Shown here one piece after another: positions 2,278 to 59,071 of a DNA stretch of 64,000 nucleotides (its first letter is position 1; each line of letters starts with the position of its first letter). The DNA is taken from positions 1 to 64,000 of IMG/VR virus record IMGVR_UViG_3300026097_000876; one strand, 5' to 3'. The position numbers and the translations under genes were made by a program. A model generated the notes under the pieces. That model was not told the origin of the DNA. It saw nothing but the letters and a program-made list of their open reading frames with translations, and did not search any database.

Positions 2278-2291
2278 AAATATCATATTTA

Positions 2292-2456: not shown

Positions 2457-2481
2457 TACTATTTTTAGTTTTTTCTAAAAA

Positions 2482-3078
2482 CTACCTCATTAAAGTAGAA
2501 ACATCAATATATGATTGGTCTAATGTGTTAAAACTAATAGTGTATCTTTCGTCACTAGAGTTTCTTTGAGTCTCATGATAAAGATAACTAGGCCAAATTA
2601 TTAATTTTCCTGCTTTAGTTGGTATTGCAACATTTTCTATATTATATTCTGTATCATGCTGTTTGGTTTCTGACATCTTAAAAACTGTAGTAGGATTTTC
2701 AATTATTAACGCACAATCATCTGGATCACTAGTTGGATAGTATGCTCCACTTAATACACTCTTTTCATGTCGATGTCTTTTAACTTTGCCGCCTTCTTTG
2801 AGAACATTACACCAACTGTTTACAATAGTGTTTTGTTGTATTCCTGCCTGATCGCAATACACACGCAAACAAGCATCAATTGATTGTCGTAAATCAGCCA
2901 TCGCTAACCTTGTAAGAGCACAATCATATCCTCCAATATAGCTGCTAAGTCCTTTCTCTAAGACTCCGTGCATCTGTAGTCCGCTAATTTGAATTTTCTT
3001 CATAATCACATCGTTATCGACTTGATCAGAAAGATCAAACTCTGCTACAAGAGTAGGAAATAGATTGTGCATTAACAC
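2482..3078 (-). CDS. Putative 2OG-Fe(II) oxygenase (TIGR02466-like)
   Basis: HRHE...SGAYY...IIWPSYLYHET...RYTISFN. Confidence 0.8.
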   Translation of the reverse strand: MLMHNLFPTLVAEFDLSDQVDNDVIMKKIQISGLQMHGVLEKGLSSYIGGYDCALTRLAMADLRQSIDACLRVYCDQAGIQQNTIVNSWCNVLKEGGKVKRHRHEKSVLSGAYYPTSDPDDCALIIENPTTVFKMSETKQHDTEYNIENVAIPTKAGKLIIWPSYLYHETQRNSSDERYTISFNTLDQSYIDVSTLMR

Positions 3079-3437
3079 TATTGCACATCCTCTGGTGATT
3101 TAATTTTTACTTCCTGCACTCGGTCATATCGAAAGCTTCGCCATCCCTTGGCATTAATGTCCCAAACCGAGCATGTTTTATCAGACGTCTTGCGAGTTTT
3201 AGATGATTCTTTATTTTCTACAACAGGCTTAATAGAATCCATTAATGTGCATGTCATTACACGTTTGTCGCCGTCTAATTTTAGAAAAGTAACTTCAACT
3301 AGTTCTTCACGAAGTATCTTTTCTAGATCCTCTTTGGTCGGAATCCCTTTTAGACTTGCTACTGTTTCGCTCACCAAAGATTCGTTCGTAGTTGTCTCTG
3401 TACTTTGCATCGTCTGCACCTTTTCGTTTTCCATCAC
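3078..3437 (-). CDS. DUF2693/WYL_2-like SH3-fold phage protein
   Basis: EVTFLKLDGDKRVMTCTL...VWDINAKGWRSFRYD. Confidence 0.7.
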   Translation of the reverse strand: MMENEKVQTMQSTETTTNESLVSETVASLKGIPTKEDLEKILREELVEVTFLKLDGDKRVMTCTLMDSIKPVVENKESSKTRKTSDKTCSVWDINAKGWRSFRYDRVQEVKIKSPEDVQ

Positions 3438-17613: not shown

Positions 17614-18975
17614 TTATTTCTTAATATTAGATCTTACTTTTGTAACATCTTTCATCACTGGTCCTTTTTGAATAATATGTCTCAGTGTTTTAGTTGCTGA
17701 GCTACCTTCTATTTTAGGACGAATTGACATAAATGTATTTTGTTTAGATTTCTTTTTGTTAAAAATATGTAGTACTGGCCAACCATTAGATTGTTTCTGC
17801 ACTTTAGCATCAAGATCAAACTCATCTCGATTCATTATTTTAGTTAATTTTTTAAAATCTAATAGATAATATTTGTTTTCTTCGAATTGTAAAAGTTTAA
17901 CATTGTCATCATTGAGGGTAGCATGTCGTTTAATACCGTCAATAAATTTTTTCATAAACTCTGCTTCATTTTCAACATCGGCACCGGATAACTTAGTTTT
18001 AAGATCTTTGGATGCGGCTACAAATGCCTTAGTTAGAGCGGATGCATAGTTTTTACTTTTTAAATAGTCTTGTTGAGTCGAGCTAATATCAACTCCAAAT
18101 ACTTCAAATAACGATGTAGTTTTTTCCCAATTACTCTCGCTAGGTTTTTCTAAACTAGAACCTCCTCCTGATTGACCAAACTGAGGGGTAGTTCCTGATT
18201 TAAGACTTAGATCAAAATGTTTAATTTTACGTTCATTATTTTCATCTAGATAAACCATATAAATGTCAGTTTTTCTGCCTTTGTTATCAGATATTCCGTC
18301 ACTTATAATTTCAACAACATCAGGTCTTTGATTTTGTTCAAAAAACTTTGCATATGCTTCTACAGTTCTAGCATCATTACAAAATGCTACAATCTGATTC
18401 ATTGTTTTAAACATTTTATTGTCTGATTTTAACAACTCAGTATTTAAAAAACTTTCCATAGCTGCTTTATTCAATCTAACAGTTAATTTAAAAACATCTG
18501 TAATGTTTTCTTTGCCTTTTGCTTTAAATTCTACTGTGCCGCCGTCGGCAGGCGTTGAATTAATTAAATTTATAACATTATCTAATGTAATGTCTGCTCC
18601 AGGACGTTGCATTAATCTTGCAACTGTTGCCGCTCCTAGCACACCTTCAGTAACATCACCTCTGTTGGAAATTTTATCTCTTTTTTCTCCTGCTACAGTT
18701 GCTTGGCCGCCGTATTCGCCTGTTTTTGTAAGCTCCTTTAAAGATATATCATTGCCATCAATGTCTTTAATAAAATAATTATTAGGTGCTCGTTTACCAG
18801 AATTTAAATCACTTTCTAATCTATCTGCTTCCTGGGGATCTAAAATAATCGAACCCCCTGTTTCTAAAGTATGGGGTTGTTTGTTGCGAACTTTATTAAC
18901 AAAGATCTCGATATTATCGCGTTTTCTTAGTTCTGAAAATTTTAATTGTCCTTCAATTAAATGTTGATAGCGCAT
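17614..18975 (-). CDS. PD-(D/E)xK-like endonuclease, probable virion protein
   Basis: GDVTEG...KTDI...LSLKS motif; N-terminus MRYQHLIEG. Confidence 0.55.
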   Translation of the reverse strand: MRYQHLIEGQLKFSELRKRDNIEIFVNKVRNKQPHTLETGGSIILDPQEADRLESDLNSGKRAPNNYFIKDIDGNDISLKELTKTGEYGGQATVAGEKRDKISNRGDVTEGVLGAATVARLMQRPGADITLDNVINLINSTPADGGTVEFKAKGKENITDVFKLTVRLNKAAMESFLNTELLKSDNKMFKTMNQIVAFCNDARTVEAYAKFFEQNQRPDVVEIISDGISDNKGRKTDIYMVYLDENNERKIKHFDLSLKSGTTPQFGQSGGGSSLEKPSESNWEKTTSLFEVFGVDISSTQQDYLKSKNYASALTKAFVAASKDLKTKLSGADVENEAEFMKKFIDGIKRHATLNDDNVKLLQFEENKYYLLDFKKLTKIMNRDEFDLDAKVQKQSNGWPVLHIFNKKKSKQNTFMSIRPKIEGSSATKTLRHIIQKGPVMKDVTKVRSNIKK

Positions 18976-19002: not shown

Positions 19003-19686
19003 TTATGCCAGTTTAGGAAATAACATATCTGTGCAGAACTTATCAACATCGTCTTCGGCAAGACCTAAACTTTTCATAACCCTAGGAGTATGAGGATTTT
19101 GTTGCTGATTATGACAGTAATAATTTTGTCCGGCTGTAACTAATTCTTGAATTCCATATCCATTAAACTCACCAACTTGGTCAAGATACTCGTGTAAGTT
19201 AGAAAGTGCAATGTCAATAATAACACCAGCTTCGTCTTCTTTCACATTGCTTGCTGCAATCATACTAGGCGTAAAGATATTAGTAGCCCATTCAGGTAGT
19301 TGTCGTTTTTTCTCTGGAATAAATTCTTTTACAGTTTCTTCGTACCATTGAACCATAGGATGGTCTAGTTCGCAACTGGGCGAAAAGTCGTGAAATGCAC
19401 CTGTCATTTTAGATTTACCTGAAATTACATCAAATCCATATATTGGTGCTGTGTTGTGAAGTTGTGGGAAGACACAAACATGCATCATCCACAATCCTTT
19501 TGTGTCTCGAGCATCAACTACATCAATGTGAGCTCTTCGAACATCTTCATTTTCCCAAACTCTATTAATCCAACCACCATCGGGTTGATTGAAGTGTGCC
19601 ATTCCTGGTTCTTCAACTTCAACCCCATGATGATCAAACGCTTGAATGATTTGATCTTTACAATCAATAAGTTGATCCCAGATCAT
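19003..19686 (-). CDS. Ferredoxin-dependent bilin reductase (PcyA/PcyX-like)
   Basis: MMHVCVFP, GAFHDFSP, LPEWATNIF, QNYYCHNQQQNPHT; adjacent to heme oxygenase. Confidence 0.85.
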   Translation of the reverse strand: MIWDQLIDCKDQIIQAFDHHGVEVEEPGMAHFNQPDGGWINRVWENEDVRRAHIDVVDARDTKGLWMMHVCVFPQLHNTAPIYGFDVISGKSKMTGAFHDFSPSCELDHPMVQWYEETVKEFIPEKKRQLPEWATNIFTPSMIAASNVKEDEAGVIIDIALSNLHEYLDQVGEFNGYGIQELVTAGQNYYCHNQQQNPHTPRVMKSLGLAEDDVDKFCTDMLFPKLA

Positions 19687-20278: not shown

Positions 20279-20324
20279 TGTTTACTCCTCGTAAAAGTTA
20301 ATCATTCAATACAGTGTATTTATA

Positions 20325-28941: not shown

Positions 28942-28994
28942 GTGATGCTCCTTTAAGTGCGTACTTTTTATTTATCTTATTCAATATTTATAGC

Positions 28995-37484: not shown

Positions 37485-38189
37485 TTATGCGTGTTGCTCG
37501 TAGAATTGATAGACCCTGTTGTACCACTCGTTGCGCCATTCGTCATATTCGTGTGGCCAAAGATCAAATTGTAGATATTGTTCGCCGCCTAGCGCCATTG
37601 AATCATCGCCACGAGTACACATAAACACGTGTCCTTCTCGAATATCTGTACCATATATTTCGTTGTGTGCTTCTGCATATGCAACCATTTGTAGGTAATA
37701 GTCCACTACCCACTCTGGTTTCTTAACTTTGTTTGATTGCTTAAAATCCATGATAGCAGGATTGCCTTTGTATTGACCAACTAAATCTGTTGTGCCAGCA
37801 TACATTTGCGGCATGTATAAGTTAATTTCACTACCCCAAATTTCATCTACATCAATCATAGCACAGTCACGAATTTGTTCCGCCATACGATGTGCTTTGA
37901 TTGCAAAAGGATTACTTCCAGGAGTAGGCCATTCACCAAACTCAATATAATCTTCAAGATACTTGTGCATGCGTGTACCAACGCCTGCGGCTTCTGTAGT
38001 AATTTCTTGTGCTTTCTTTTCGCCTACACGCTTGCGCCATGCAATAAGATGTGTTTTATCTTTAGTGGCATCAAGAATAGTTGTTACGCTTGCAACTGCT
38101 CCGCCGTCTGGAGTAGCATACAATCTCTTGCCGTTTATTTCTTTACGTGATATTGGTTGGTAATCAAACTTTTCTGTAATTAAACTCAT
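37485..38189 (-). CDS. PD-(D/E)xK exonuclease (MGME1/Cas4-like phage exonuclease)
   Basis: SVTTIL, GTRMH, YAGTTDL, IMDFKQS, LQMVAYA. Confidence 0.85.
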   Translation of the reverse strand: MSLITEKFDYQPISRKEINGKRLYATPDGGAVASVTTILDATKDKTHLIAWRKRVGEKKAQEITTEAAGVGTRMHKYLEDYIEFGEWPTPGSNPFAIKAHRMAEQIRDCAMIDVDEIWGSEINLYMPQMYAGTTDLVGQYKGNPAIMDFKQSNKVKKPEWVVDYYLQMVAYAEAHNEIYGTDIREGHVFMCTRGDDSMALGGEQYLQFDLWPHEYDEWRNEWYNRVYQFYEQHA

Positions 38190-38193
38190 ATTC

Positions 38194-38793
38194 TCACTTT
38201 ATGTTAAAGTCCCAAACTAGGGCTCGTCTGTTATCTTCTGTTGGGTATGCACCGTGCCATACCCTATCATCCATTATAACCACTCTGCCGGGTGCAGGAT
38301 GGAACTTGTGATCGTATGTATATCCATTTTGATCTTGCAAAACAGTATACAAGCATCCGTTGAAGCGATTATCTTTGGTAGGAACAATGTTATCAAAGAA
38401 CATTACACTAGATGCAAATCTTTTATTTGTCTGTCCTACTTTATCTGTTGAATGAAAATGACCAGCTTGCCAGCCTCCTGGAAAATAATTAAGTGTCCAG
38501 GCTTTGTGAGCTTGCTCGTCTGTTCTTTCTTCTAGTTGTGTTATAGGCATATTCAACTGAGAAAAGATGTCCAACAACCATTCTTTGTATTCTTTTCTTT
38601 CTCTAGACCATTCTTCATTTTGCAAAGGTTTTTGTATGCCATTGACCGTACAAGATCCAGTAGAGATATCTGCTGACGTAAAATCAAATAATTTTTCCAT
38701 ATCTTTGTAATAAGGATAAATTGCAGATACTACCCAGTGCTGATTTGGAACAGCATAGAATTCGATGTCATTTATTTGTTTTAATAGACTCAA
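38194..38793 (-). CDS. Putative 2OG-Fe(II) oxygenase
   Basis: AWTLNY...GHFH...VWHGAYP...RRALVWD. Confidence 0.65.
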   Translation of the reverse strand: MSLLKQINDIEFYAVPNQHWVVSAIYPYYKDMEKLFDFTSADISTGSCTVNGIQKPLQNEEWSRERKEYKEWLLDIFSQLNMPITQLEERTDEQAHKAWTLNYFPGGWQAGHFHSTDKVGQTNKRFASSVMFFDNIVPTKDNRFNGCLYTVLQDQNGYTYDHKFHPAPGRVVIMDDRVWHGAYPTEDNRRALVWDFNIK

Positions 38794-38845: not shown

Positions 38846-39109
38846 TTATTTGAGTGCGGCTTTGGTTGCTCTGTCAGCCATTTGGTCAACGGTCTTGTCG
38901 TCGTCTGGTTCTCTAGGAGTTTCTGCGCCAGCGAGAACAACACCGTCTTGATCAAAGTTATTAACAAGATCTTTTACTCTTGTGTCGTTGTTATATGCCT
39001 GAACAAAACTGTCTTTGTCGAAGTGTTCGCTGCCTACATTTGAAAGAATGTCGTTGAGTTTTTCCCAACTAATTTTTGTTGAGCCTTGTTCTAACTCTAG
39101 ATAGAGCAC
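38846..39109 (-). CDS. Hypothetical late protein
   Basis: ORF in the late cluster; start may lie slightly upstream. Confidence 0.5.
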   Translation of the reverse strand: MLYLELEQGSTKISWEKLNDILSNVGSEHFDKDSFVQAYNNDTRVKDLVNNFDQDGVVLAGAETPREPDDDKTVDQMADRATKAALK

Positions 39110-39141: not shown

Positions 39142-40062
39142 TTACTTTTTTTTTGAATCTGATAGCATCTTGCCTAGACGTCTACTTAGATCGATACTTT
39201 CTCTTTTCTCTCTATCTGCTGGCTCGTCTCCTCCAGCGGATGCATCTGCTGTTGCAAATTCATCTTCGTCGTCTTCAGGGGCGTCATCTTCTGCATCGAC
39301 TGGCTCCATTTCTAGATCCATTTCGTCGTCTACTTCATCGCCCATTGTTTGAGGTGCACCTTCGCCTGTTAAAGTAGCTACGCCACCTGTCAAAGCATCT
39401 CTAGTACTTTCCAATGATGTAAACAGTTCTTCTAGCGCAGGTTTAACTGCGGCAATAAACTGTTCAGATTTTTCAATACCTAGTTCGTCTTTAATTTTAT
39501 CGCCTAGTTCTAACATTGATTCGGTTTGCATTTCTGCTGTGTCTTCCATCCAACTAGTAACACGATCAACCATATCTTTAGCTGCCATTACTAGTGTTGC
39601 CTCTTGTTCAGCACCTTCACGTACAACAGATTCTTTCTTGGCTCCTACGTTAGGGTCCTCGTCGTCTTTGTCTGCCCACGGTGGAACTCCGTCGCCATCT
39701 CCGTCTGGCATACTACCTTTGCCTGACTTAGCTTTTTTATCTTCTGGCTTCTTGCTTTTATTCTTTTCTTGATATGCTTTAAGACCTGCTGGAACTTCAC
39801 CTTCTGCCATCTCACGCTCTGCAATCTCTGCATTTACAACATCAAGGAACATTTTACTTTTTTGATACGTATCACTTGTAGAAACGCTGTCAAAACTTTC
39901 ATTAGTTTCAACTTGAAAAAGTTTTGTTCTCAATTTGTTACGAACGTCTTCTAACTGTTCTGTAGTAAATGCATCTACATTAACTGTTTGTCCGAATCTC
40001 TTAGCCAAACTTTCATTTAGTGTCTTGACCGTAATAGGTTTTGAAAATTCTGAAATAAGCAT
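39142..40062 (-). CDS. Acidic head core/scaffold-like protein
   Basis: Very acidic; several L/I-x-E sites; MLISEF N-terminus. Confidence 0.55.
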   Translation of the reverse strand: MLISEFSKPITVKTLNESLAKRFGQTVNVDAFTTEQLEDVRNKLRTKLFQVETNESFDSVSTSDTYQKSKMFLDVVNAEIAEREMAEGEVPAGLKAYQEKNKSKKPEDKKAKSGKGSMPDGDGDGVPPWADKDDEDPNVGAKKESVVREGAEQEATLVMAAKDMVDRVTSWMEDTAEMQTESMLELGDKIKDELGIEKSEQFIAAVKPALEELFTSLESTRDALTGGVATLTGEGAPQTMGDEVDDEMDLEMEPVDAEDDAPEDDEDEFATADASAGGDEPADREKRESIDLSRRLGKMLSDSKKK

Positions 40063-40089
40063 TACTGTATGTTCCTTGTCATTATAGTT

Positions 40090-41094
40090 TTATTTATCAA
40101 ATATAAATGTTTCTATTGCTTCTAAAGCGGTCCAACACTTCTCCATAGCAATATCAAACTGTATTTCTGCGGTGTCTTTTTTAATATTGTTTTTTGAATT
40201 CTCGTATGATCTTTTGGCAAATACAGCATCCATGTAGTATTTACTCGCTCGGTCGTCAAAATTCATTACACTATTAATGTGTTCTTGTTTTTGTTCTATT
40301 GTTAGTTTTGCTATAGCAAGAGCTGCCGCTTTAGTAAATGTTGTAACTATGTGGGAGTTTGTTTTACAATCAAAAAGTTTATAACCTTTTTTGTGTTTTC
40401 GAATTGCAATATGCTTTAGACGAATGCTGTTGCCTTTTTCGTAAGGAATCGCCACTCGATCTAAACCAGTAGTTATTACACGATCTAATTCTTCTGCTAA
40501 TTGTTCATTGAAGATCATTTGCTACAACCAATACAGTCCCGTTATTCACTATTTTACTTAATAAACATTTACGAATCAAAGATTCAATTATGAATCTGTC
40601 TCGTTCTGAAAAACTATGTATTGGTCGTACCGAACTACATTTTTTCAACACTTGTTTCTCCTCATTGGAAGTTTGAATGTCGAAACTTGATAGTAGTTCG
40701 TTTAATTTCATTTTTGGATTAGCTGTTGCACAGCGCCTTTAATTTGGTCTGAGTCCTTTTGATAAACTATCTTTGGTCCTTTTTTGTTTTTAGGATCAGC
40801 TATTGTGATTTCGTTTCCTGCTACTTTATCAACTACAGTTTCTTGATCACCTATGTTGAGTTTTGCACCTGGCTTTAACAATTTATTAGCTGCCATAGTG
40901 TTTGTTTTTTGTGCTACTTTTTGTGCGGCTTTCTCCTGTGCTGTTTTAGGAGGATTAGCTGCGTTAGTTGCTGATTTTACGGCATTTCCCATTGCCTTTC
41001 CAACTCTGCCAACAGCCGAAGAAACTACTTTGCCAACTTGACCCACTGTAGGAATCGCTTCATTAGTATTTTGGCTAAACTCATAAAACCTCAT
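40090..41094 (-). CDS. Three late hypothetical ORFs (40090-40518, 40505-40711, 40708-41094)
   Basis: Overlapping junctions; capsid-targeting-like N-termini. Confidence 0.6.
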
Positions 41095-41683
41095 TTCATT
41101 CTCCTACGTTTTGTACTACGCTTGGTTGGTTTCATTCTAGTTTTATTTAACTTTGAAACTAACTTTGAACTTGGATTGGTCCTTTTAGTAAATCTCGACT
41201 TGATCTTAATTAAAGGTGACTTCTTTGCCTTTGTTTTTTTAAGAGCTTGTTTACTAGCAACGTTAACCGGAGTCGAGCACGTTTGTGCTTTGGCAACAAT
41301 ACGACCTTTCTTTTGTCCTGAGTTACAGCGATACTTGCGAACAAGTTTACCACCTTGGCGACTAAAGATTTGCGTTGCGCCTTCTGTGATGTCGGTAATA
41401 TTCATCTAGCACTCTTGTTTAATCTTGCAAGTGCAACTGATGCTGGATTAGTTCTTTTGGTTTTGCGAGCTTTCCTAGCAATTCTCGGCCCTAGTCTTGC
41501 ACGAGTTTTCTTGAGGGTCATGCGGGCTTTTAAATTAGGCGATGCAAAACACTGTGCCATGTTAGACACAATACGGCCTTTTCTCTGACCCATAGAACAT
41601 TTGTATTTGCGGACGAGTTTTTTACCTTTGCGGCCCCAAACTTGTTTTTCTTGTATTTTTGATGTTATTTCTGTGATCTGCAT
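41091..41683 (-). CDS. Tandem paralogous basic proteins (41091-41405 and 41402-41683)
   Basis: Both carry KLVRKY(R/K)C..GQ(K/R)KGRIV...C. Confidence 0.75.
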
Positions 41684-41702
41684 ATGGTATTTATGCAGGA
41701 TG

Positions 41703-41939
41703 TTATTGAAAGGATATTAATAGAACTACGATAGTAGATAATAGGCCTGCAACAATAGTACCGGTTGCACCAATCAAGACTTTCATCATAGACTTGTTGC
41801 CTTCTTGAATATCATTGTGTATATCTTCAACTTTAAGCTCAATCTTGTTAAGACGTGACTCAAGATTTTGATATCTCTGCTCGCACAAATCAACATGTGC
41901 TTCTAAACTTTCTCTTTCTAGTTTGGTGGCTCTTGCCAT
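41703..41939 (-). CDS. Coiled-coil plus C-terminal TM protein (holin/XhlA-like)
   Basis: LEAHVDLCEQRY...; single TM. Confidence 0.55.
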   Translation of the reverse strand: MARATKLERESLEAHVDLCEQRYQNLESRLNKIELKVEDIHNDIQEGNKSMMKVLIGATGTIVAGLLSTIVVLLISFQ

Positions 41940-42010
41940 AACCGAATCTCCGTTCCTATTTTCTCTGGAAGGGGCCTTACTTTGTACCTAAATGATTATG
42001 TGATGTTTGC

Positions 42011-42403
42011 CTATTCTATTACTATGTTTTGTTGTTTGCCTTGTGCTCTAAACACATTATTATTTATCTTAATGGTTTCATTTAGACCCGAAACAACCGG
42101 AACTAGGTCGAAATCTTTTAATAAGTCAATAGGATTAGGAAATTCTTGACCTTCATCTATCTTGCATTCCAGTGTCCAAACATGATGGCTTCCTTTGTAG
42201 TCTTCGCCAAAGCCTAGCTTTTTTAATTTTGCTGTTGATATTTTTTCAACAGTAGGAGACTGATCAAAATAAATGTTAGTCCTTAGAGTTAAGGTTTGTA
42301 CAAAAGTCATAAAGTTTGCTTGTTGATTGATCGCAATATTATCCATGCTATTACTTTTATGTTGTTTAGTTTCTGTGATATCAATCAAGGTATAGACTTT
42401 CAT
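42011..42403 (-). CDS. Hypothetical protein
   Basis: ORF after a terminator. Confidence 0.55.
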   Translation of the reverse strand: MKVYTLIDITETKQHKSNSMDNIAINQQANFMTFVQTLTLRTNIYFDQSPTVEKISTAKLKKLGFGEDYKGSHHVWTLECKIDEGQEFPNPIDLLKDFDLVPVVSGLNETIKINNNVFRAQGKQQNIVIE

Positions 42404-42420
42404 AAACTTACTTATTGCTG

Positions 42421-42452
42421 ATAAAAAAAGAGCCACTTAAAAAGTGGCTCTT
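42421..42452 (-). terminator. Intrinsic terminator
   Basis: AAAGAGCCACT-TTTTA-AGTGGCTCTTT followed by T run. Confidence 0.75.
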
Positions 42453-42498
42453 TAGTGTGACGCCTTCCGTTGTCACGGTTCCTAAGGTAGTAGGAATC

Positions 42499-42894
42499 TT
42501 ATGCTGCGTTAAGACCGATGAATGTGCCTGGCTCAGTTACTGTTACAACTGCGTTTCCGCCTGCTGCATCTTTCCAAATACCTGCACCTTCAATAAGACC
42601 TGTGTCTTCGATGATGTGGCCTAGACGTGCTGCAATTGAAGTAATGTCATTTGCATGACCGTCCATTACAACTACTAGTTCTTCACCGTCTGCTGCAAAC
42701 TCAGCTAATAGTGGGCTTAGTGCTCTTAGCATTCCACGTGCTGTACCTTCGGTGATTGCTGTGCCTGCGCCGCCTGCTTGTGTGTCAGCTGTTGCTGCTG
42801 TTTCTAGTACGATTTTAAAAACTTTTAGTTGAGCTGTGCTTACTAAATCTTCTAGTGCGATTAAATCGCTGTTTACTCTTGTTACTCCTGCCAT
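42499..42894 (-). CDS. Probable abundant late structural protein
   Basis: CTAAATA late promoter, 5' hairpin, AAGGAG RBS, own terminator; Ala/Gly/Thr-rich. Confidence 0.6.
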   Translation of the reverse strand: MAGVTRVNSDLIALEDLVSTAQLKVFKIVLETAATADTQAGGAGTAITEGTARGMLRALSPLLAEFAADGEELVVVMDGHANDITSIAARLGHIIEDTGLIEGAGIWKDAAGGNAVVTVTEPGTFIGLNAA

Positions 42895-42972
42895 TTTCTT
42901 TCTCCTTTTCTTGAAATGACACTTCGTTACTCTACGAAGTTGTTATAAGTATTTAGCTTAGAAGAAAAAAAA

Positions 42973-44236
42973 CTACTTTTTAGGTTCTTTTTTGGCTCGA
43001 TTTTCTAAATTTCTTAACTGTTGGGCAAATCCTGGTCCAGCTTTAACTATGTTGTCTATAACTTGTATTGCAGGCAAGTATCCCTGAACTACACTTGAAG
43101 GGATGCTCTTGCCGTCCTTAGCTAATTCTAAAAACTTTTTAGTCATCATTAAGTTTTTGGTTCCTACAAGATATCTATACGACAACATATCTTGTCCTGT
43201 TACAGCAATGTCCGGAACACTAACTTTTGGTTCTGAATCACTTACTGTGCTAGTTTCTAAATTTTTATCAGCGGCTAACTTTTCTAAGTTGTCAATAATA
43301 TCACTTGAACGTAGTTTTGCTCGTGATGCGAATAATAACCTGGTTACTATTGCTTTACGATTTACTCGGTTTAGACTTGCCCAATTGAATACAGACCTGC
43401 GGATTGCCTTGTAGTCTGAATTAGTAATACTCAGTGCGGCTTCTATTTTAATAAAAGTTTCTGCATCAGATCTATCAACAGCACTTCCGTTTGATAGTTT
43501 AGACATATAACCGTTAAATCGCATTGTAGGAAAGTTTGTGCGTTGTCTTAGAGTCATTGCAGCGCCAGGATCTTTTAGTTTATTTAGAGCAACTTCGTCA
43601 CCATTTACAAAATAAACAAAATTATGCAGGTCAGTCCCGTTCATTTTAAACTGGGAATAATCACTATCTTTAGTTTTCTTTGCATAGTTTACAGCCGAAA
43701 CACTGTGTGTAGGATATTTTCTTAGCAATTCAAGAACCAGCATCGTGAGATACAGACGCTGACCACAATCGGTATAGGTCAGCGATCTTACATTGTTTTG
43801 ATCACGGGTCAATCTCGCTTCGTGTAGTTCCTGTAAAAACTTCATCTTATTTCATATATTTTTGAACAAAGTTTTGTACAATTTGTTTTGGATTGTCTGA
43901 AAGAACATCTTCTAATCCTACTGAACTTTGAATATCTTTTTGGAACTGAGCGCGGATAGTGCTTTTAACATTGTCTGTTCTTGCTAGCATACCTAAAGTT
44001 TTAGCTTGTTCTGGACTTATGTTAAATGTTTTGCCGTCGTCAGTCTTGACCGAACGAACAGGATCTTTAATATCATCTCCCTGACTTTGAACAATTTTTT
44101 CTAACTGGTCTGTCATAGGATCTTCATCGTATCCTTTACCCATAGTTGCATCATCATCTTGATCTAGTTCTGACCCTACTCCGCCTAGTTCTAAATCATC
44201 AAATTCACTTTCATTAAGCAAATCAATTAATTTCAT
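42973..44236 (-). CDS. Two late hypothetical proteins (42973-43845, 43847-44236)
   Basis: N-termini MKFLQELHEA and MKLIDLLNES. Confidence 0.65.
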
Positions 44237-44245
44237 TTGTTTCTC

Positions 44246-46627
44246 CTATCGTTCTATAGCTCTGTTCGCAGCACTAAATCCTGCTCTGTTAACTAATTTA
44301 ATATCGCCTTCGGGATGTGCTAGTACATAGCCTTCGCCGCCTGACTTTCCAGCTGTTTTTGCTTTAACGGTTCCTGGTCTGCTGTCTAAATCAGAAATAA
44401 TACTATCTTTAACTTTCATTATTCCTGATATAACTTCAAACAACGATGTCCATGCACTCATGTTCTGTTTAATATATTCGATAATCTTTTGTTTCTTACC
44501 TTGGCTGATGTCTTTTTTAGTATCTAACCATTTAATAAAGTCGCGCCCAAGATTATCAAGACCTGTGTCTACTTTGCTGTTCATATACTTATAAATGATT
44601 TTAGGAAAGTCTTTCATTTTCATTTGTGTAAGTTTGTTTACATCTAATAAACTATCAATATCAGCAGAGTCTTTTTTAATAATTTGTGCAAGTCTATTAA
44701 TTTCTGAATTATCAACTTGTGCAGGCTCTTCAATAGTCACAGGCGGTACCACTAATAAATCATTGCCTTGGAATATGTCTAAGTCTTTTAATGGCTGTTC
44801 ACTGCCGTCTGCATTTACCATTCTGTGTACAACTACACCGGCGGTTGATCTAGCAATCTTTTTACCTAGATCGCTTTCAACATCTATAGCATATTCAACA
44901 ATATTTGGTTTGAACACAAAGTTTTTATCTTGTACTGGCGGAGTATCATAGTATAACAGATCACCTTTGAAGTATCCTCTATACTCTTCAGGAACTGCCT
45001 TTTCAAACACACCGAATGCTTGTGCCATGTTGTTCGCAAATGCAATACGTTTAGGATCGTCTTTGTTTTTACCACCGCTTCGATTGAGAAGTTCTTGTTT
45101 AAGTGCTTCTGGATCAGTTGTTCTGCCAACTCCGCCTGACTTAATAAACCCTCCTTTGTCTGTGAATACAAATTCGCCATTATCATTTCGTCCAAAAACA
45201 ACCGCTGGTGATCCATCCCATTTTAGTGTTACATTGTTTTTGCCTTCTTGTGCCATATTACGTAAACTTTTTAAAGCTCTAAGTGCTCCTTGTGACCCTT
45301 GTAGATACACTAGGTCTTCTGCATGATCAATGCGAGCACCTTCTGTAAGTTGTATGCTTTCTGTAAATTTATTGTAAAATTTTAGACCGCGTTTTTTATC
45401 TATTGTTTTTATCTTGTCATTTTGAACGCTAGTCCAAATTTTTCTTTTGTCGTCATAGGTCCAAATGTTTTTTTGCTTGTCAACAAAAGAACTTCCTGAT
45501 TTAATATCTTTAGTGTCTTTGCTGTCGCTAGCTTTTCCTACTACTGGATCACTGGTAATGCCAGCTGTCTTTTTAACAGCATCAACTCCTTTTGATATTT
45601 TATCGCCAACTTGGCCCGGGATTGTTTTTGCTCCGCCTGCTTTTTTATATTCTCCTGGCATATCTTTTAATTCACCGCCTGGAGAAAATGTTGATCGGCC
45701 TGCTTTGTATCCTGCATATCCCGATTTTGCCGCGTCTCGCCCTATCATGTACGCCTTGCCAGCTGTTTTAGCGGCAAGTTTTCCTGCTCCTTTGATTGCT
45801 TTCCCTACAAACTCGTCTGTGCGTTTTCTCTCAGCTATTCTAATTCCTGCCCTAAGAGCATTAGTATGTTCGGGTACCAATTTACCCTGCTTTTCCATAT
45901 TCTCTTTCCAAGGAGCAATTAGTTCATCGTAGTTAGGATCACCTTTTAACTTTGCCAACATACTTTCAACAGTATGGGTATCTGGTTCTTTAGCACCTTT
46001 GCCCAATAGTATCTCTGCAATCTCATCCCAGTTGTCTGCAACAACAGCATCACCGTTGTTAGGATCAACTATGCCCTTTGTAGGACTAAACTTGTAACCT
46101 CTGCCTCTTGCGAGACTAGACAGTAGTACAGCTCTGTCTGCTCCAGTATAGTTTTCTGTGCCGCCACGCTTTGCACCTTTTTGTAGTGCAGGATTGTCTG
46201 TCAGCATAAAGTCTGTTTGTACAAAACCGTTTTTAGGATTGCCTTTTATAGGTGTGCGGAAGTGTACTTGATTTCCAGCATCTTTGATCCATCCTGCTTC
46301 GAAGGTCCTGCCCTTATTCATAATCTCTAAATCAGGGATGCCTTGCTTTTGACACCACGCACTAAGTTTTGCTATTATTTCTTCTTTAGGCAATTCCCTA
46401 GTATCTGTGTTTAGATCTAAATCACCAGATGAGTTCTTTTTAAATGTTCCATCTGGATCTGTTTTTGTACCTGTAGTTCCTAGAAATTCTTTTTTAGTAA
46501 ACTTAAATCCGAATGTACTATTAAGCCAATCTATTGTTGGTTGTACATCAGCTGTAGCAATTCTTGATGCAATTAATTCCTTTTCAGGTTCTGTCTTAAA
46601 AACATTGCCGCTTTCTTTAAGAATCAT
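44246..46627 (-). CDS. Pol-beta-like nucleotidyltransferase fused to an ATP-dependent ligase-like (KxDG) domain
   Basis: SSGDLD...VQTDF; TLKWDGSP...FKGDLLY...GEGYVL...KLV. Confidence 0.65.
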   Translation of the reverse strand: MILKESGNVFKTEPEKELIASRIATADVQPTIDWLNSTFGFKFTKKEFLGTTGTKTDPDGTFKKNSSGDLDLNTDTRELPKEEIIAKLSAWCQKQGIPDLEIMNKGRTFEAGWIKDAGNQVHFRTPIKGNPKNGFVQTDFMLTDNPALQKGAKRGGTENYTGADRAVLLSSLARGRGYKFSPTKGIVDPNNGDAVVADNWDEIAEILLGKGAKEPDTHTVESMLAKLKGDPNYDELIAPWKENMEKQGKLVPEHTNALRAGIRIAERKRTDEFVGKAIKGAGKLAAKTAGKAYMIGRDAAKSGYAGYKAGRSTFSPGGELKDMPGEYKKAGGAKTIPGQVGDKISKGVDAVKKTAGITSDPVVGKASDSKDTKDIKSGSSFVDKQKNIWTYDDKRKIWTSVQNDKIKTIDKKRGLKFYNKFTESIQLTEGARIDHAEDLVYLQGSQGALRALKSLRNMAQEGKNNVTLKWDGSPAVVFGRNDNGEFVFTDKGGFIKSGGVGRTTDPEALKQELLNRSGGKNKDDPKRIAFANNMAQAFGVFEKAVPEEYRGYFKGDLLYYDTPPVQDKNFVFKPNIVEYAIDVESDLGKKIARSTAGVVVHRMVNADGSEQPLKDLDIFQGNDLLVVPPVTIEEPAQVDNSEINRLAQIIKKDSADIDSLLDVNKLTQMKMKDFPKIIYKYMNSKVDTGLDNLGRDFIKWLDTKKDISQGKKQKIIEYIKQNMSAWTSLFEVISGIMKVKDSIISDLDSRPGTVKAKTAGKSGGEGYVLAHPEGDIKLVNRAGFSAANRAIER

Positions 46628-46877
46628 TTTTCTTTGCCTCGTTTATTTTATTAATGCCACGCTTAAACTTGCGAGGATCGGAACTTTTAACACTATTAAT
46701 AAACCGTCTTTCTAATTCTAGTGCTTCCTCCGGATCATAATGGTCGGAAATCTTTTCAAATAGATTGATAACACTTTCAATTAAATTTTGACCAGTTGTC
46801 TCGATAAGATGTGCATTATCGCGATTCAAATTTAAATTGTTTAGCTCTTCTAATATCGATCGAGTATGTTTTTTCAT
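46617..46877 (-). CDS. Hypothetical protein
   Basis: Downstream of a CTAAATA late promoter. Confidence 0.6.
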   Translation of the reverse strand: MKKHTRSILEELNNLNLNRDNAHLIETTGQNLIESVINLFEKISDHYDPEEALELERRFINSVKSSDPRKFKRGINKINEAKKNDS

Positions 46878-46946: not shown

Positions 46947-47708
46947 ATGTCTATTATTAACCTTACTCTCGCTCAGAGAGGACTGTTGTTTGCTAAACTT
47001 GCTAGTATTGCGTATTTTAATGCTAAAGAAGCAAAAAGTCAAGCAAAAAAATTAGGATTTACTACAGTAGAGTTTTATGATAAAGCAGGGGCACAGGCTT
47101 ATCGCTTTATGAACAAAGTCGATCTTGTTATTATTTGTCGCGGTACGGAGCCAACAGAATGGAATGACATCAAAGCAGACCTAGACGCTGTACCTGTAAT
47201 GGCAGAGACTGTTAGTCGTGTACACAGAGGTTTCAAAGCAGAAGTTGACGAGCTATGGCCAATGGTTATGGAAGATGTTCAAAGAGAAGGTGACGAACGA
47301 GATGTTTGGTTCTGTGGGCACAGTCTAGGAGCAGCAATGACTACTATTATGGCAAGTCGTTGTTTCCACGATCCAGACTTACCAAATCCTGTGGAAGTAC
47401 ACACCTATGGTTCGCCTCGTGTAGGATGGCCAGGATATGTTAAGGGGTTAGGCATGACACATCATCGTTGGGTAAACAACAATGATATCGTAACCAAAGT
47501 TCCAATGGCTATCATGGGTTATCGTCATCACGGTATCGAACATTACATTGATTCAGAAGGTGATGTTGATCAAGAAAAGGGCTTTGCTCGCTTCTGGGAT
47601 GGCTTCCAAGGGTTCTGGAGAGGACTTGTTTCAGGTAAGGTTGATCAAATCGACGATCACAATATGAGTAACTATATTGCTCACTTGGAGCGTTTTGCTA
47701 ACAAGTAA
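46947..47708 (+). CDS. Class 3 lipase (alpha/beta hydrolase)
   Basis: CRGTE, VHRGF, GHSLGAA, YGSPRVG, DIVTKVP, DDHNM. Confidence 0.9.
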   Translation: MSIINLTLAQRGLLFAKLASIAYFNAKEAKSQAKKLGFTTVEFYDKAGAQAYRFMNKVDLVIICRGTEPTEWNDIKADLDAVPVMAETVSRVHRGFKAEVDELWPMVMEDVQREGDERDVWFCGHSLGAAMTTIMASRCFHDPDLPNPVEVHTYGSPRVGWPGYVKGLGMTHHRWVNNNDIVTKVPMAIMGYRHHGIEHYIDSEGDVDQEKGFARFWDGFQGFWRGLVSGKVDQIDDHNMSNYIAHLERFANK

Positions 47709-54371: not shown

Positions 54372-54410
54372 GATAAAAACTCCTGTAATGTATTTATAAT
54401 AAGTATACAC

Positions 54411-56614: not shown

Positions 56615-57181
56615 TCACACCACAGTGTTGTCAATTAACAACTGATCCATCATTTGATCACTGGCCAACTGAATACCCATCTTCCACTGATCTTCTTCAT
56701 CTTCGTTGTAAAAAATTTCGTGATTGGGCTCTACCAACAACCAAGCCTTGTGTTGATACAGTTCTTCCTGAAGCTGTTTGACTCCCCAAGTGCTCATTCC
56801 GGCTATCAGTCTCCAACAGGCAGGTAAGTTGCCATCTACCATCTTGTCCAGCATTAGTTCGTCTGAACTAATACAATTGCCGTGGGTCACAGGAATAGTG
56901 TTTGTGCTGTTCCATTCATCAGTGTGCAGGAGTATTAGGCTCTGTTCACCCACTGGACCGCCTCTGTACACACTGCCAGTGGCACCTGTGTTGTAGATGC
57001 CACGTAGGCCCTGAAGCCTGTCAATGGTGAGATAACTGGGCTTGTTGAGAATCAATCCAAACACTATGAGATCTGTTTGTTCATAAAGATAAACCACAGT
57101 CTGTGCAAAAGTTGGATCTCGCATGGTGCCAGGGCGAGCAATTAATAGCTTGCCTTTGAACTTGGTTTCAACCTTGGTCAT
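56615..57181 (-). CDS. YqgE/AlgH (DUF179) family protein
   Basis: GKLLIARP..RDPTFAQTVVYL, GLILNKP, VYRGGPV, QLQEEL...AWL. Confidence 0.85.
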   Translation of the reverse strand: MTKVETKFKGKLLIARPGTMRDPTFAQTVVYLYEQTDLIVFGLILNKPSYLTIDRLQGLRGIYNTGATGSVYRGGPVGEQSLILLHTDEWNSTNTIPVTHGNCISSDELMLDKMVDGNLPACWRLIAGMSTWGVKQLQEELYQHKAWLLVEPNHEIFYNEDEEDQWKMGIQLASDQMMDQLLIDNTVV

Positions 57182-57426
57182 TAGCTGTAGTCCGGAAGAG
57201 GTCCACCATAGGGTTTACCTTTGATGTGTTTGCCTCCCACAGATACTCTGCGTTTGCCGATCTTGTGGCTCTTTTTGCCCGAACGCTTGCGCAGGCCTTG
57301 ACTTCTACAACTGGCCAAAGCACTAGCACCTAGTTTTGAATTAGGTTTACTGCTCTTGCACAGTTTTTTAGAAGCCTGCCATTCTTCAAGATCATCTGCC
57401 GAGGTTAAAAGTTCATCTATTCGCAT
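57181..57426 (-). CDS. Small basic late protein
   Basis: MRIDELL N-terminus; ATAAATA promoter; Lys/Arg-rich with two Cys. Confidence 0.65.
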   Translation of the reverse strand: MRIDELLTSADDLEEWQASKKLCKSSKPNSKLGASALASCRSQGLRKRSGKKSHKIGKRRVSVGGKHIKGKPYGGPLPDYS

Positions 57427-59004: not shown

Positions 59005-59071
59005 TCTTTTGTACAACTGTTAACAAAACTTAAAATATAAATACGTTTAATAAAGTTTAGGAGAGTGCAAA

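What the first reader, a model, noticed from the sequence alone, without database searches (positions are those of the whole stretch)
39142..46627. A block of late genes shares a capsid-targeting-like leader, pointing to an injected proteome
Seen: N-termini MLISEF..TLNE/S, MKLNELL, MRFYEF..TNE/A, MNITDITE/G, MQITEI..IQE/K, MKFLQELHE/A, MKLIDLLNE/S and MILKE/S; outside the block also MRYQHLIE/G (nuclease at 18975) and MRIDELL..LEE/W (57426). Known: T4 internal proteins carry a ~10-aa CTS (MKTYQEFIAE) removed by prohead protease after Glu. Inference: about ten head-packaged proteins are delivered with the DNA and are prime anti-defence candidates.
Basis: partly seen in the sequence, partly recalled or inferred. 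Interest (0 to 1): 0.65.

Follow-up and report, generated by a model that had tools for sequence, protein, structure and literature searches.

The report
Capsid-targeting leaders on jumbo-phage cargo genes
A marine jumbo phage related to RaK2 and PA5oct has a fast-changing gene block whose otherwise unrelated proteins share a short N-terminal tag ending in a T4-type protease site, so they are most likely proteins packed inside the phage head, as with phage T4's internal proteins.

Summary
The window is the first 64 kb of a 262-kb uncultured jumbo myovirus. Its major capsid protein is 66-71% identical to those of the RaK2/PA5oct group, and it encodes a T4 gp21-type prohead protease. Seven of 13 consecutive genes at 38.8-44.2 kb start with M-x-[ILF]-x-[DE]-[ILF] (permutation p = 9e-4).

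In 80 related environmental loci, 407 ORFs carry this leader. All lie in the same block upstream of a conserved exonuclease gene, and none of about 920 ORFs downstream has it. They belong to more than 25 unrelated families. The leader is followed by a linker of variable length that ends in [LIV]-x-E directly before the conserved mature domain.

In phage PA5oct, 11 of the 14 genes of the syntenic interval are detected in virions by mass spectrometry (p = 4e-6).

So a T4-like capsid-targeting, protease-removed propeptide is well supported.
- "Late" is plausible, because T4-type late-promoter-like motifs precede the block.
- "Injected" and "anti-defence" are untested. The cargo looks mixed: protamine-like basic proteins, an acidic protein, a PolX-like nucleotidyltransferase fused to an RNA-ligase-like enzyme, and in relatives peptidoglycan-binding and membrane-active proteins.
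- MILKE/S is doubtful, and "nuclease" for the 453-aa protein is unsupported.

The parts
46617..46877 (-). 86-aa conserved protein without a leader; the upstream boundary of the block
   Evidence: phrog_11854 'virion structural protein', E 1.5e-15. Homologous to PA5oct gp225 and to Atu_ph07 gp068, which is annotated as a virion structural protein. 0 of 32 relatives have a leader. CTAAATA lies 19 nt upstream of the start.
44246..46627 (-). 793-aa fusion protein: PolX/Pol-beta-like nucleotidyltransferase (aa 20-221), disordered basic linker (aa 256-429), RNA-ligase-like DUF6267 domain (aa 430-793)
   Evidence: Pfam DUF6267, E 2e-36. AF2 model m163eedcc860a. VIA-align Z 9.0, rmsd 3.5 A over 154 residues, to Pol lambda/beta/mu palm and thumb. 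Weak Foldseek hits to T4 Rnl1 and archaeal RNA ligase, E about 0.05, plus a KWDG motif. It is two separate genes in most relatives.
45338..45349 (-). Internal L-T-E|G junction (E429|G430), the predicted protease site that would release the ligase-like domain; a decayed leader remnant LKFYNKFTESIQ lies just upstream (45341-45385)
   Evidence: In 46 unique relatives the ligase-like domain [GA]ARI.HAED is always preceded by [LIV]-x-E. This holds whether a 13-21-aa leader, a 43-53-aa extension or a 400-aa fused protein precedes it.
43847..44236 (-). 129-aa acidic protein; leader MKLIDLLNE|S (44210-44236)
   Evidence: 15 of 20 unique relatives have the strict core, e.g. MKMKDIVKE|G and MRIKEFVE|D. 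Mature pI 4.3.
42973..43845 (-). 290-aa basic all-alpha protein; leader MKFLQELHE|A (43819-43845)
   Evidence: Relatives read MDFIKELHE|ARMTR, and E9 and R11 are invariant in 31 sequences. Homologues in Atu_ph07 gp064 and in Phosso. AF2 pLDDT 86 with no solved-structure match: Foldseek E > 1, VIA best Z 5.9.
42499..42894 (-). 131-aa acidic protein without a leader
   Evidence: 0 of 6. CTAAATA lies 55 nt upstream of the start.
42011..42403 (-). 130-aa protein with a conserved N-proximal ..[LV][IV]D[IV]TET.. segment; not the typical leader
   Evidence: 0 of 49 relatives have the core. The conserved DITET may be part of the fold.
41703..41939 (-). 78-aa protein with a C-terminal transmembrane helix; no leader
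   Evidence: phrog_1193, E 6.5e-5.
41402..41683 (-). 93-aa basic paralogue A; leader MQITEITSKIQE|K (41648-41683); predicted mature part has pI 12.0, 27 K+R and 0 D+E
   Evidence: 48 of 48 unique relatives have the core. The [ILVFM]xE site sits a fixed 12-15 aa before the RKYRC anchor, while leader length varies from 8 to 23. Charge figures.
41091..41405 (-). 104-aa basic paralogue B; leader MNITDITE|G (41382-41405); predicted mature part has pI 12.0, 32 K+R and 0 D+E
   Evidence: 45 of 48 relatives have the core..
40708..41094 (-). 128-aa basic Gly/Ala-rich protein; leader MRFYEFSQNTNE|A (41059-41094)
   Evidence: 8 of 8 relatives have the core. A leader-bearing protein in relatives with a similar EQQLDEI..PAIG..A Gly/Ala-rich start gives a sub-threshold SseC-like match.
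40505..40711 (-). 68-aa protein; leader MKLNELLSSFDIQTSNEE|K (40658-40711)
   Evidence: 41 of 46 relatives have the strict core, and [ST]NEE is conserved. Weak phrog_16215 'virion structural protein' match.
40090..40518 (-). 142-aa protein without a leader
   Evidence: 0 of 53 relatives have the core.
39142..40062 (-). 306-aa very acidic protein (pI 4.3); leader MLISEFSKPITVKTLNE|S (40012-40062)
   Evidence: 54 of 61 relatives have the core, and LNE|[ST] is conserved. phrog_14154 'virion structural protein', E 6.7e-13. Homologue of PA5oct gp237, which starts MFLKDVKITES and is detected by MS. GATAAATA lies 28 nt upstream of the start.
38846..39109 (-). 87-aa ORF with a GTG start (MLYLELEQG), probably an N-terminally shortened copy
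   Evidence: Some relatives start MRVSDIILE|AEP or MKVYELCE|AGEP. The gene in this position is detected by MS in phAPEC6 (gp182c, MRFRDLTEE|A) and in PA5oct (gp238).
37485..38189 (-). PD-(D/E)XK exonuclease; the downstream synteny anchor, not cargo
   Evidence: Pfam PDDEXK_1. PA5oct gp240, E 5e-51. 562 IMG/VR relatives.
17614..18975 (-). 453-aa protein outside the block with leader MRYQHLIE|G (18952-18975); function unknown
   Evidence: phrog_3560, unknown function. The single relative starts MKYKNIIVTE|G, and its neighbour starts MKLRQLYE|A. CATAAATA lies 24 nt upstream of the start.
57181..57426 (-). 81-aa protein outside the block; leader MRIDELLTSADDLEE|W (57382-57426); predicted mature pI 11.0
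   Evidence: GATAAATA lies 8 nt upstream of the start.

Best explanation
The block is a hypervariable cargo locus for internal head proteins of a RaK2/PA5oct-type jumbo myovirus.

Proposed mechanism:
1. Each cargo protein is made with an 8-20-residue acidic, amphipathic N-terminal propeptide (M-[KRQNL]-[ILFM]-x-[DE]-[ILFV], then a variable linker).
2. By analogy with the T4 capsid targeting sequence, this propeptide binds the scaffolding core while the prohead assembles.
3. The phage's T4 gp21-family prohead protease then removes it by cutting after the Glu of an [LIV]-x-E site that lies directly in front of the mature domain.
4. The mature proteins stay in the head with the DNA, and some of them probably leave with it at infection.

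Shown:
- The shared leader, its confinement to the locus, and its conservation at the peptide level.
- The fixed [LIV]-x-E junction.
- The presence of the protease gene.
- Virion association of the syntenic PA5oct and phAPEC6 proteins.

Inferred:
- Binding of the leader to the core.
- Actual cleavage.
- Location in the head rather than in another part of the virion.
- Ejection into the host.
- What the cargo does in the host.
For: 1. Leader on unrelated proteins. Seven block genes have the strict core and MKFLQELHE a one-residue-shifted form; 17614-18975 (loose form), 57181-57426, 175102-175347 and 180496-181227 lie outside the block. In relatives, 95 more leader ORFs fall into 16 families absent from this genome.

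2. Confinement. 407 leader ORFs lie upstream of the exonuclease anchor and 0 of about 920 lie downstream. Conserved neighbours have none.

3. Selection acts on the peptide, not the DNA. Codons at each leader position are diverse: GAA/GAG/GAT/GAC at position 5, and at least ten different codons at positions 3 and 6.

4. Propeptide anatomy.
- In 81 unique basic-family sequences, 80 have the core and all have [ILVFM]xE 12-15 aa before the RKYRC anchor, while leader length runs from 8 to 23.
- The ligase-like domain is always preceded by [LIV]xE|[GA], even when it is fused behind 400 residues.
- The basic paralogues carry every one of their acidic residues in the leader.

5. The protease. Peptidase_S77, 89.8 bits, and phrog_207, E 5.5e-58. 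It sits in a T4-like order: portal, then an 81-aa protein with a leader, then protease, scaffold and MCP.

6. Virion data in relatives.
- PA5oct syntenic interval gp226-gp239: 11 of 14 detected by MS against 82 of 435 elsewhere, p = 3.8e-6.
- Leader rule in PA5oct: 8 of 93 MS-positive against 7 of 273 MS-negative, OR 3.6, p = 0.017.
- PA5oct gp150, the homologue of G000 175102-175347 (E 1.5e-13), is MS-positive.
- phAPEC6 gp182c is MS-positive.

7. phAPEC6 and 121Q, which belong to the same capsid lineage, contain a radiation-sensitive inner body whose proteins are unidentified (PMC7247149).

8. T4 precedent. A 10-residue CTS is removed by gp21, and diverse internal proteins share only the CTS (PMC3012670; PMC9026906).
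Against: - There is no proteomic, expression or structural datum for this uncultured virus.
- Virion MS in PA5oct cannot tell head from tail, and its published analysis says nothing about N-termini.
- The leader rule separates PA5oct virion from non-virion proteins only moderately. A naive 8-residue PSSM does not separate them at all, and small early ORFs also begin MxIxEI.
- The Atu_ph07 tandem array, whose members all start M[RK]WxQLTE, is not annotated as virion protein, although that study reported more than 112 virion proteins.
- The core M-x-[LI]-x-E is itself a possible gp21 site, so targeting and cleavage signals cannot be separated by sequence.
- Cultured relatives (RaK2, phAPEC6, Vibrio phage 2.275.O) have only one to three leader genes at this locus.
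Confidence: 0.72

Rival explanations
1. The leader does direct packaging and is cleaved. However, the cargo is mainly structural: DNA-condensing or inner-body proteins and envelope-penetration proteins. It would not be a set of anti-defence effectors, so the reader's functional inference would be wrong even though the mechanism is right.
For: - Two paralogues have a mature pI of 12 with no acidic residue, like T4 IPs or protamines.
- There is a very acidic 306-aa partner.
- An inner body is seen in phAPEC6 and 121Q.
- Relatives carry leader cargo with PG_binding_1 (40 bits against a cut-off of 23) and a Gly/Ala-zipper SseC-like segment.
- The basic family and the 306-aa protein are conserved in nearly all 80 loci. 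That pattern is unlike fast-turnover effectors.
Against: - The locus also holds enzymes (PolX-like NTase, RNA-ligase-like).
- It holds many patchily distributed families: 16 extra clusters in 80 loci. This is the pattern of T-even IP loci, where IPI* is an anti-restriction protein.
Confidence: 0.45
2. The shared N-terminus is a general start-of-gene bias, either AT-rich codons or favourable translation initiation, or it is a result of paralogy. On this view it is not a targeting signal.
For: - The core occurs at 5% of gene starts outside the block against 1.1-1.4% internally.
- It is found on small early ORFs of PA5oct that are not in virions.
- Two block genes are true paralogues.
Against: - The leader occurs in 407 ORFs against 0 on the two sides of the anchor, within the same genomes and with the same codon usage.
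- The families are unrelated beyond residue 25.
- Linker length varies while the [LIV]xE junction stays fixed.
- Codons are diverse at each position.
- In the fused 793-aa protein the now-internal leader has decayed while the LTE|G site is kept.
Confidence: 0.04
3. The leader targets the proteins somewhere other than the capsid interior. Candidates are the tail, baseplate or 'hairy' fibre structures of this phage group, the membrane, or an intracellular compartment. Alternatively, it is an inhibitory pro-sequence removed by another protease.
For: - Virion MS does not localise proteins.
- This phage group has elaborate extra fibres.
- The genomes encode Clp and FtsH-type proteases, as PA5oct does.
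- The Atu_ph07 array is not reported in virions.
Against: - The junction matches the specificity known for gp21-type head proteases, which cut after Glu with [LI] at P3.
- The same leader is on the 81-aa gene between portal and protease, the position of T4 gp67.
- The leaders are acidic and amphipathic with no hydrophobic core, so they are not Sec or Tat signals.
Confidence: 0.12

Closest known systems
Phage T4 capsid targeting sequence (CTS) and internal proteins IPI, IPII, IPIII and Alt, processed by the gp21 prohead protease
   Same: - A short N-terminal leader is shared by otherwise unrelated proteins.
- The leader ends in a Glu that follows an [LI]-x motif.
- A gp21-family protease gene lies in a T4-like head module.
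- Some cargo is small and very basic, and one is a large enzyme (compare Alt).
- The locus is hypervariable between related phages.
- The T4 leader MKTYQEFIAE fits the one-residue-shifted form seen here in MKFLQELHE (string confirmed in the literature).
   Different: - The consensus is M-[KR]-[ILFM]-x-[DE]-[ILFV] rather than MKTYQEF.
- A linker of variable length (total 8-23 aa, sometimes about 50) separates the core from the cleavage site.
- There are many more cargo genes per genome (about 10) and per clade (more than 25 families).
- The host phage is a distant jumbo relative with a 387-aa MCP.
- No experiment exists for this clade.
Inner-body and ejection proteins of phiKZ, 201phi2-1 and SPN3US, with propeptides removed by gp175/gp245-type proteases
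   Same: - Jumbo phages in which many head proteins are packaged with the DNA.
- Genes are clustered.
- Cleavage is C-terminal to Glu.
- An inner body is visible by bubblegram, also in the RaK2-like phages 121Q and phAPEC6.
   Different: - The phiKZ group uses S/A/G-x-E-type sites and long propeptides, some with several sites. This is from my own knowledge of Thomas et al. 2012; the logos are only referred to.
- phAPEC6 has no sequence similarity to the phiKZ inner-body proteins (PMC7247149).
- Here the leader is a short, recognisable N-terminal tag.
Encapsulin cargo-loading peptides and scaffold-mediated cargo incorporation in HK97-fold shells
   Same: A short terminal peptide, found on unrelated proteins, directs them into an HK97-fold shell. 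This is a functional analogy drawn from my own knowledge.
   Different: Encapsulin targeting peptides are usually C-terminal, bind the shell protein itself and are not removed. No homology is implied, and none was tested.

Membership tests
T4-type CTS-targeted, gp21-processed internal head proteins | The phage encodes a T4 gp21-family (Peptidase_S77) prohead protease within a T4-like head gene module | tested here: met
   PF03420, 89.8 bits (cut-off 27), at G000 172971-173426. phrog_207, E 5.5e-58. Portal, scaffold-like gene and MCP lie adjacent.
T4-type CTS-targeted, gp21-processed internal head proteins | A short N-terminal leader is shared by proteins that are otherwise unrelated | tested here: met
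   more than 25 families share only the first 6-20 residues. The leader occurs in 407 ORFs on one side of the anchor and 0 on the other.
T4-type CTS-targeted, gp21-processed internal head proteins | The leader ends at a gp21-type site ([LI]-x-E followed by cleavage) directly before the mature domain | tested here: met
   The site is at a fixed distance from the conserved domain while leader length varies. [LIV]xE|[GA]ARI.HAED holds in 46 of 46 ligase-like proteins. This is sequence evidence only.
T4-type CTS-targeted, gp21-processed internal head proteins | The proteins are found in purified virions or heads | tested here: inconclusive
   Indirect only. PA5oct syntenic interval: 11 of 14 MS-positive. 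Homologues gp237 and gp150 are MS-positive. phAPEC6 gp182c is MS-positive. The Atu_ph07 array is not annotated as virion protein. There are no data for this virus, and none that localise proteins to the head.
T4-type CTS-targeted, gp21-processed internal head proteins | The mature virion protein lacks the leader (a new N-terminus after Glu) | not testable with these tools
   The peptide tables of the PA5oct paper are not held, and the paper does not discuss N-termini.
T4-type CTS-targeted, gp21-processed internal head proteins | The leader is sufficient to carry a foreign protein into the head | not testable with these tools
   This needs a bench test such as a leader-GFP fusion.
T4-type CTS-targeted, gp21-processed internal head proteins | The cargo is ejected into the host with the DNA | not testable with these tools
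   No data.
Sec/Tat signal peptides (considered and set aside) | A positively charged n-region followed by a hydrophobic h-region of at least 7-10 residues (or a twin-arginine motif) | tested here: not met
   The leaders are 8-20 aa and acidic, with alternating hydrophobic residues and no hydrophobic run.
phiKZ-type inner-body proteins | Sequence membership in the phiKZ inner-body paralogue families | not tested
   Not searched here. PMC7247149 reports that no phAPEC6 protein resembles the phiKZ inner-body proteins.

The most novel reading that the evidence does not exclude
The leader marks the so far unidentified inner-body and ejection proteome of the whole RaK2/PA5oct/Atu_ph07 lineage of jumbo phages. 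The locus would then be a plug-in cassette site: any gene that acquires the roughly 10-residue tag is loaded into the head and delivered ahead of gene expression. Many of the more than 25 patchily distributed cargo families would be first-minute counter-defence or takeover effectors. Candidates include a packaged PolX-like nucleotidyltransferase and an RNA-ligase-like end-repair pair. The tag could then be used both to mine such effectors from metagenomes and to load foreign proteins into jumbo-phage heads.
Probability: 0.3. Interest if true: 0.75.

Novelty: new member of a known kind. Interest (0 to 1): 0.55.

Why it matters
RaK2-like jumbo phages are common in water, soil and clinical isolates. 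Some of them, such as PA5oct, are candidates for therapy. An inner body has been seen in phAPEC6 and 121Q, but its proteins have not been identified. In the papers I could search, nothing describes proteolytic processing or capsid-targeting leaders for this group.

A simple rule read from sequence gives three things:
- A concrete candidate list for the internal and ejected proteome. The rule is an N-terminal M-[KR]-hydrophobic-x-[DE]-hydrophobic, then a linker, then [LIV]-x-E.
- Exact predicted mature N-termini, which existing mass-spectrometry raw data could confirm or refute.
- A possible natural tag for loading proteins into very large capsids.

It also shows that T4's CTS strategy reaches far beyond the T-even phages. 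The principle itself is already known from T4, so the conceptual surprise is moderate.

Tried and rejected
- Megablast of the block against 50,697 phage records found nothing. tblastn of the 306-aa protein also found nothing. HMM-level searches were needed instead.
- Pfam gave no family for 9 of the 10 block proteins. Sequence searches of the PDB with the 793-aa and 453-aa proteins gave nothing useful.
- A position-specific matrix built from six G000 leaders (first 8 residues) did not separate PA5oct virion from non-virion proteins (Mann-Whitney p = 0.66). The bare core is therefore not a sufficient predictor. Only the core plus the [ILVFM]xE rule gave an enrichment.
- The exact T4 late promoter TATAAATA does not occur in the block. 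The looser NATAAATA/CTAAATA motif does.
- The 290-aa protein gave a confident model but no structural relative (Foldseek, VIA-wide), so its function remains open.
- Complex prediction with the prohead protease plus the 93-aa basic protein returned no verdict (score 0.00, controls not run). This is evidence neither for nor against.
- The PA5oct supplementary peptide tables are not held. The Atu_ph07 supplement that is held does not contain the virion table.
- The search for related loci for the 453-aa protein found a single relative.
- I considered and set aside a Sec/Tat signal, a conserved nucleotide element (the codons are diverse) and simple paralogy (the families are unrelated).
- I did not use the large protein searches or the read-mapping tools. 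No claim here rests on an absence of relatives, and no sequencing-run data were needed.

Full report
WHAT THE WINDOW IS

The window is the first 64 kb of a 261,806-bp IMG/VR virus record. The record is linear, estimated about 73% complete, and has 37.7% G+C.

The major capsid protein (G000 170554-171717) is 66-71% identical to those of Sinorhizobium phage Phosso, Vibrio phage 2.275.O, Pseudomonas phage PA5oct and the RaK2/GAP32/121Q group. The virus is therefore an uncultured member of the RaK2-like jumbo myoviruses, which are distant relatives of T4.

The head module runs in T4 order: portal, an 81-aa protein, two further genes, a Peptidase_S77 (T4 gp21-type) prohead protease, a scaffold-like gene, then the MCP.

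THE OBSERVATION

All genes from 46877 down to 37485 lie on the minus strand and are tightly packed.

The N-termini read:
- MKLIDLLNE|S
- MKFLQELHE|A
- MQITEITSKIQE|K
- MNITDITE|G
- MRFYEFSQNTNE|A
- MKLNELLSSFDIQTSNEE|K
- MLISEFSKPITVKTLNE|S

Across the whole genome the strict core M-x-[ILFVMYW]-x-[DE]-[ILFVMY] is present at 22 of 301 gene starts. Seven of these lie within 13 consecutive genes, and only 0.09% of 100,000 shuffles reach that density. After internal Met the pattern occurs at 1.1%.

Not every block gene has a leader. The 86-, 131-, 130-, 78- and 142-aa genes do not. MILKE/S of the 793-aa protein is not a typical leader, because it runs directly into the conserved GGNVFK of the folded domain.

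EVIDENCE FROM RELATIVES

The exonuclease gene at 37485-38189 has 562 relatives in IMG/VR. I fetched 80 loci with 10-kb flanks.

Orthologues of the block genes keep the leader:
- 306-aa protein: 54 of 61
- basic paralogues: 48 of 48 and 45 of 48
- 68-aa protein: 41 of 46
- 129-aa protein: 15 of 20
- 128-aa protein: 8 of 8

Conserved genes without a leader never have it (exonuclease 0/58, RNR 0/55, and so on).

Altogether 407 ORFs of at least 60 aa carry the leader. All lie within 10 kb upstream of the exonuclease gene, and none of about 920 ORFs downstream does. Ninety-five of them belong to 16 families that this genome lacks. The locus is therefore a hypervariable array of unrelated genes that share only their first residues.

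Codons at each leader position are diverse, so selection acts on the peptide and not on a DNA or RNA element.

PROPEPTIDE ANATOMY

In 81 unique sequences of the basic family, 80 have the core. All have an [ILVFM]-x-E site 12-15 residues before the conserved RKYRC motif, while the length of what precedes the site varies from 8 to 23 residues, and twice reaches about 50. Examples are MLLRELTTSLDE|KRVW.., MLLREFTTTPEIETDLDE|KQIW.. and MNLRELIADPVIESLDETFDLDE|KQIW...

The predicted mature parts of the two G000 paralogues have pI 12.0, 27 and 32 K+R, and no acidic residue at all. Every Asp and Glu is in the leader.

The RNA-ligase-like domain always begins [GA]ARI.HAED and is always preceded by [LIV]-x-E. 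This holds whether the upstream part is a 13-21-residue leader, a 43-53-residue extension or a 400-residue fused protein.

In G000 the 793-aa gene is such a fusion. The former leader is now internal and has decayed (LKFYNKFTESIQ), but the LTE|G junction at E429|G430 is retained.

This pattern has three parts: a recognisable N-terminal core, a linker free to vary, and a site fixed against the mature domain. It is what a protease-removed targeting propeptide should look like. The site matches the Glu-specific [LI]-x-E preference of the gp21 family (PMC9026906). The MCP N-terminus shows the same kind of site..TALLE|G here and ..SALTE|G in PA5oct.

VIRION EVIDENCE IN CULTURED RELATIVES

The PA5oct GenBank record marks the 93 proteins found in virions by ESI-MS/MS.

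Synteny anchors link window 38.2-46.6 kb to PA5oct gp226-gp239. The anchors are the 86-aa protein = gp225, the exonuclease = gp240, and RNR = gp243.

- Eleven of those 14 genes are MS-positive, against 82 of 435 elsewhere (Fisher p = 3.8e-6).
- The only block protein with a detectable PA5oct homologue, the 306-aa acidic protein, matches gp237, which starts MFLKDVKITES and is MS-positive.
- G000 175102-175347 (MILRELFYFDKE|T), which lies next to the portal gene, matches gp150 (MKINDIITE|G), also MS-positive.
- A leader rule defined on the marine clade (core plus [ILVFM]xE within 25 residues) picks 8 of 93 MS-positive and 7 of 273 MS-negative PA5oct proteins (OR 3.6, p = 0.017). Two of the seven MS-negative picks lie beside MS-positive leader genes.
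- In phAPEC6 the leader-bearing gene just upstream of the exonuclease (gp182c, MRFRDLTEE|A) is MS-positive.
- phAPEC6 and 121Q contain a 91 x 18 nm radiation-sensitive inner body whose proteins are unknown (PMC7247149).

COUNTER-EVIDENCE AND LIMITS

- A simple matrix of the first eight residues does not separate PA5oct virion proteins from the rest, because small early ORFs also begin MxIxEI.
- Atu_ph07 has a striking tandem array of about ten 255-aa paralogues that all start M[RK]W[HEDQ]QL[TIN]E. They are not annotated as virion proteins, although more than 112 virion proteins were reported for that phage.
- Virion MS does not localise proteins to the head.
- No data exist for this virus itself.
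- RaK2, phAPEC6 and Vibrio phage 2.275.O have only one to three leader genes at this locus. The large expansion is thus a feature of the marine clade, partly of PA5oct, and elsewhere in the genome of Atu_ph07.

WHAT THE CARGO IS

- 793-aa protein. The AF2 model has two confident domains joined by a disordered basic linker. Residues 20-221 align to the palm and thumb of family-X polymerases (Z 9.0, rmsd 3.5 A, 154 residues), and the sequence carries a GTTG..GDLDL motif. Residues 430-793 are Pfam DUF6267, carry a KWDG motif, and give weak Foldseek matches to T4 RNA ligase 1 and archaeal RNA ligase (E about 0.05).
- 290-aa protein. It is a confident all-alpha model (pLDDT 86) with no structural relative.
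- 453-aa protein outside the block. It has no recognisable family, so 'nuclease' is unsupported.
- Relatives. They carry leader cargo with a peptidoglycan-binding domain and with a Gly/Ala-zipper segment.

The cargo is therefore mixed: DNA-associated basic proteins, an acidic partner, nucleic-acid enzymes, and probable envelope-active proteins. Anti-defence roles are possible, as for T4 IPI*, but nothing here tests them.

TIMING OF EXPRESSION

Exact TATAAATA is absent from the block. The heptamer ATAAATA, however, lies within -70..-5 of gene starts, in the right orientation, in 41 of its 67 occurrences, where 2.5 would be expected.

Variants precede:
- 46877 (CTAAATA)
- 42894 (CTAAATA)
- 40062 (GATAAATA)
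- 18975 (CATAAATA)
- 175347 (CATAAATA)
- 181227 (TATAAATA)

This resembles the T4-type late promoter, but it also precedes the RNR gene, so 'late' is plausible rather than shown.

COMPARISON WITH WHAT IS KNOWN

The closest system is the T4 CTS. Its first 10 residues (MKTYQEFIAE) target IPIII to the prohead core and are removed by gp21, and T-even internal proteins are diverse but share the CTS.

The present case shares the protease family, the N-terminal position, the Glu junction, the basic cargo and the hypervariable locus. It differs in the consensus, the variable linker, the number and diversity of cargo genes, and the phage lineage.

None of the papers I could search on PA5oct, phAPEC6, phiKp24 or Atu_ph07, nor a 2026 review of jumbo phages, mentions processing or targeting leaders in this lineage. 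The literature I could search is limited to open-access papers.

I therefore file it as a new member of a known kind.

VERDICT

- The capsid-targeting and propeptide reading is well supported by comparative anatomy and by proxy proteomics (confidence about 0.7).
- Injection and anti-defence remain hypotheses.

Noticed in passing
window 44246-46627 (junction at 45338-45349): The 793-aa gene is a fusion of two genes that are separate in most relatives (about 285 aa and about 385 aa). Five other relatives also have the fused form. The internal former leader has decayed, but the LTE|G site is kept, which suggests polyprotein-like processing.
   Followed up: yes
whole genome G000; in the window e.g. 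20317-20324, 28985-28992, 54391-54398, 59036-59043: A T4-type late-promoter-like motif (NATAAATA/CTAAATA) is strongly enriched 5-70 nt upstream of gene starts in the correct orientation: 41 of 67 ATAAATA sites, where 2.5 would be expected.
   Followed up: partly
L003 (Agrobacterium phage Atu_ph07, record 41.8-50.6 kb): A tandem array of about ten 250-490-aa paralogues (gp054-gp063) all begin M[RK]W[HEDQ]QL[TIN]E. Further copies lie elsewhere in that genome (e.g. 290373, 304780, 349666). They are not annotated as virion proteins.
   Followed up: partly
L079:1257-2108 and L055:4397-4882 (related IMG/VR loci): Leader-bearing cargo families that are absent from this genome. One has a PG_binding_1 domain above the Pfam cut-off. 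One has a Gly/Ala-rich segment with a sub-threshold SseC-like match. Both hint at action on the cell envelope.
   Followed up: partly
window 19003-19686 (-): A 227-aa protein matches phrog_7278 'ferredoxin oxidoreductase' (E 1.7e-20), annotated as an auxiliary metabolic gene.
   Followed up: no
window 46947-47708 (+): An esterase/lipase-like gene (phrog_21992, E 1e-22) lies on the opposite strand, directly upstream of the block.
   Followed up: no
window 41703-41939 (-): A 78-aa protein with a C-terminal transmembrane helix and no leader sits in the middle of the cargo block. It is conserved in 58 related ORFs and matches phrog_1193 ('hemolysin').
   Followed up: no
window 38194-38793 (-): A 2OG-Fe(II) oxygenase-like gene lies between the cargo block and the exonuclease gene. 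It is found in only about 12 of the 80 related loci.
   Followed up: no
G000 197045-212005 (+), outside the window: A giant 4,986-aa ORF follows the baseplate and tail genes, comparable to the 3,857-aa virion protein gp128 of PA5oct.
   Followed up: no
L136 (IMGVR_UViG_3300034736_000401) 2213-3376: In the only relative of the 453-aa protein, the next gene starts MKLRQLYE|A and carries a GGFHPFHPGH (HxGH) cytidylyltransferase-like motif. This looks like another enzyme with the leader.
   Followed up: no
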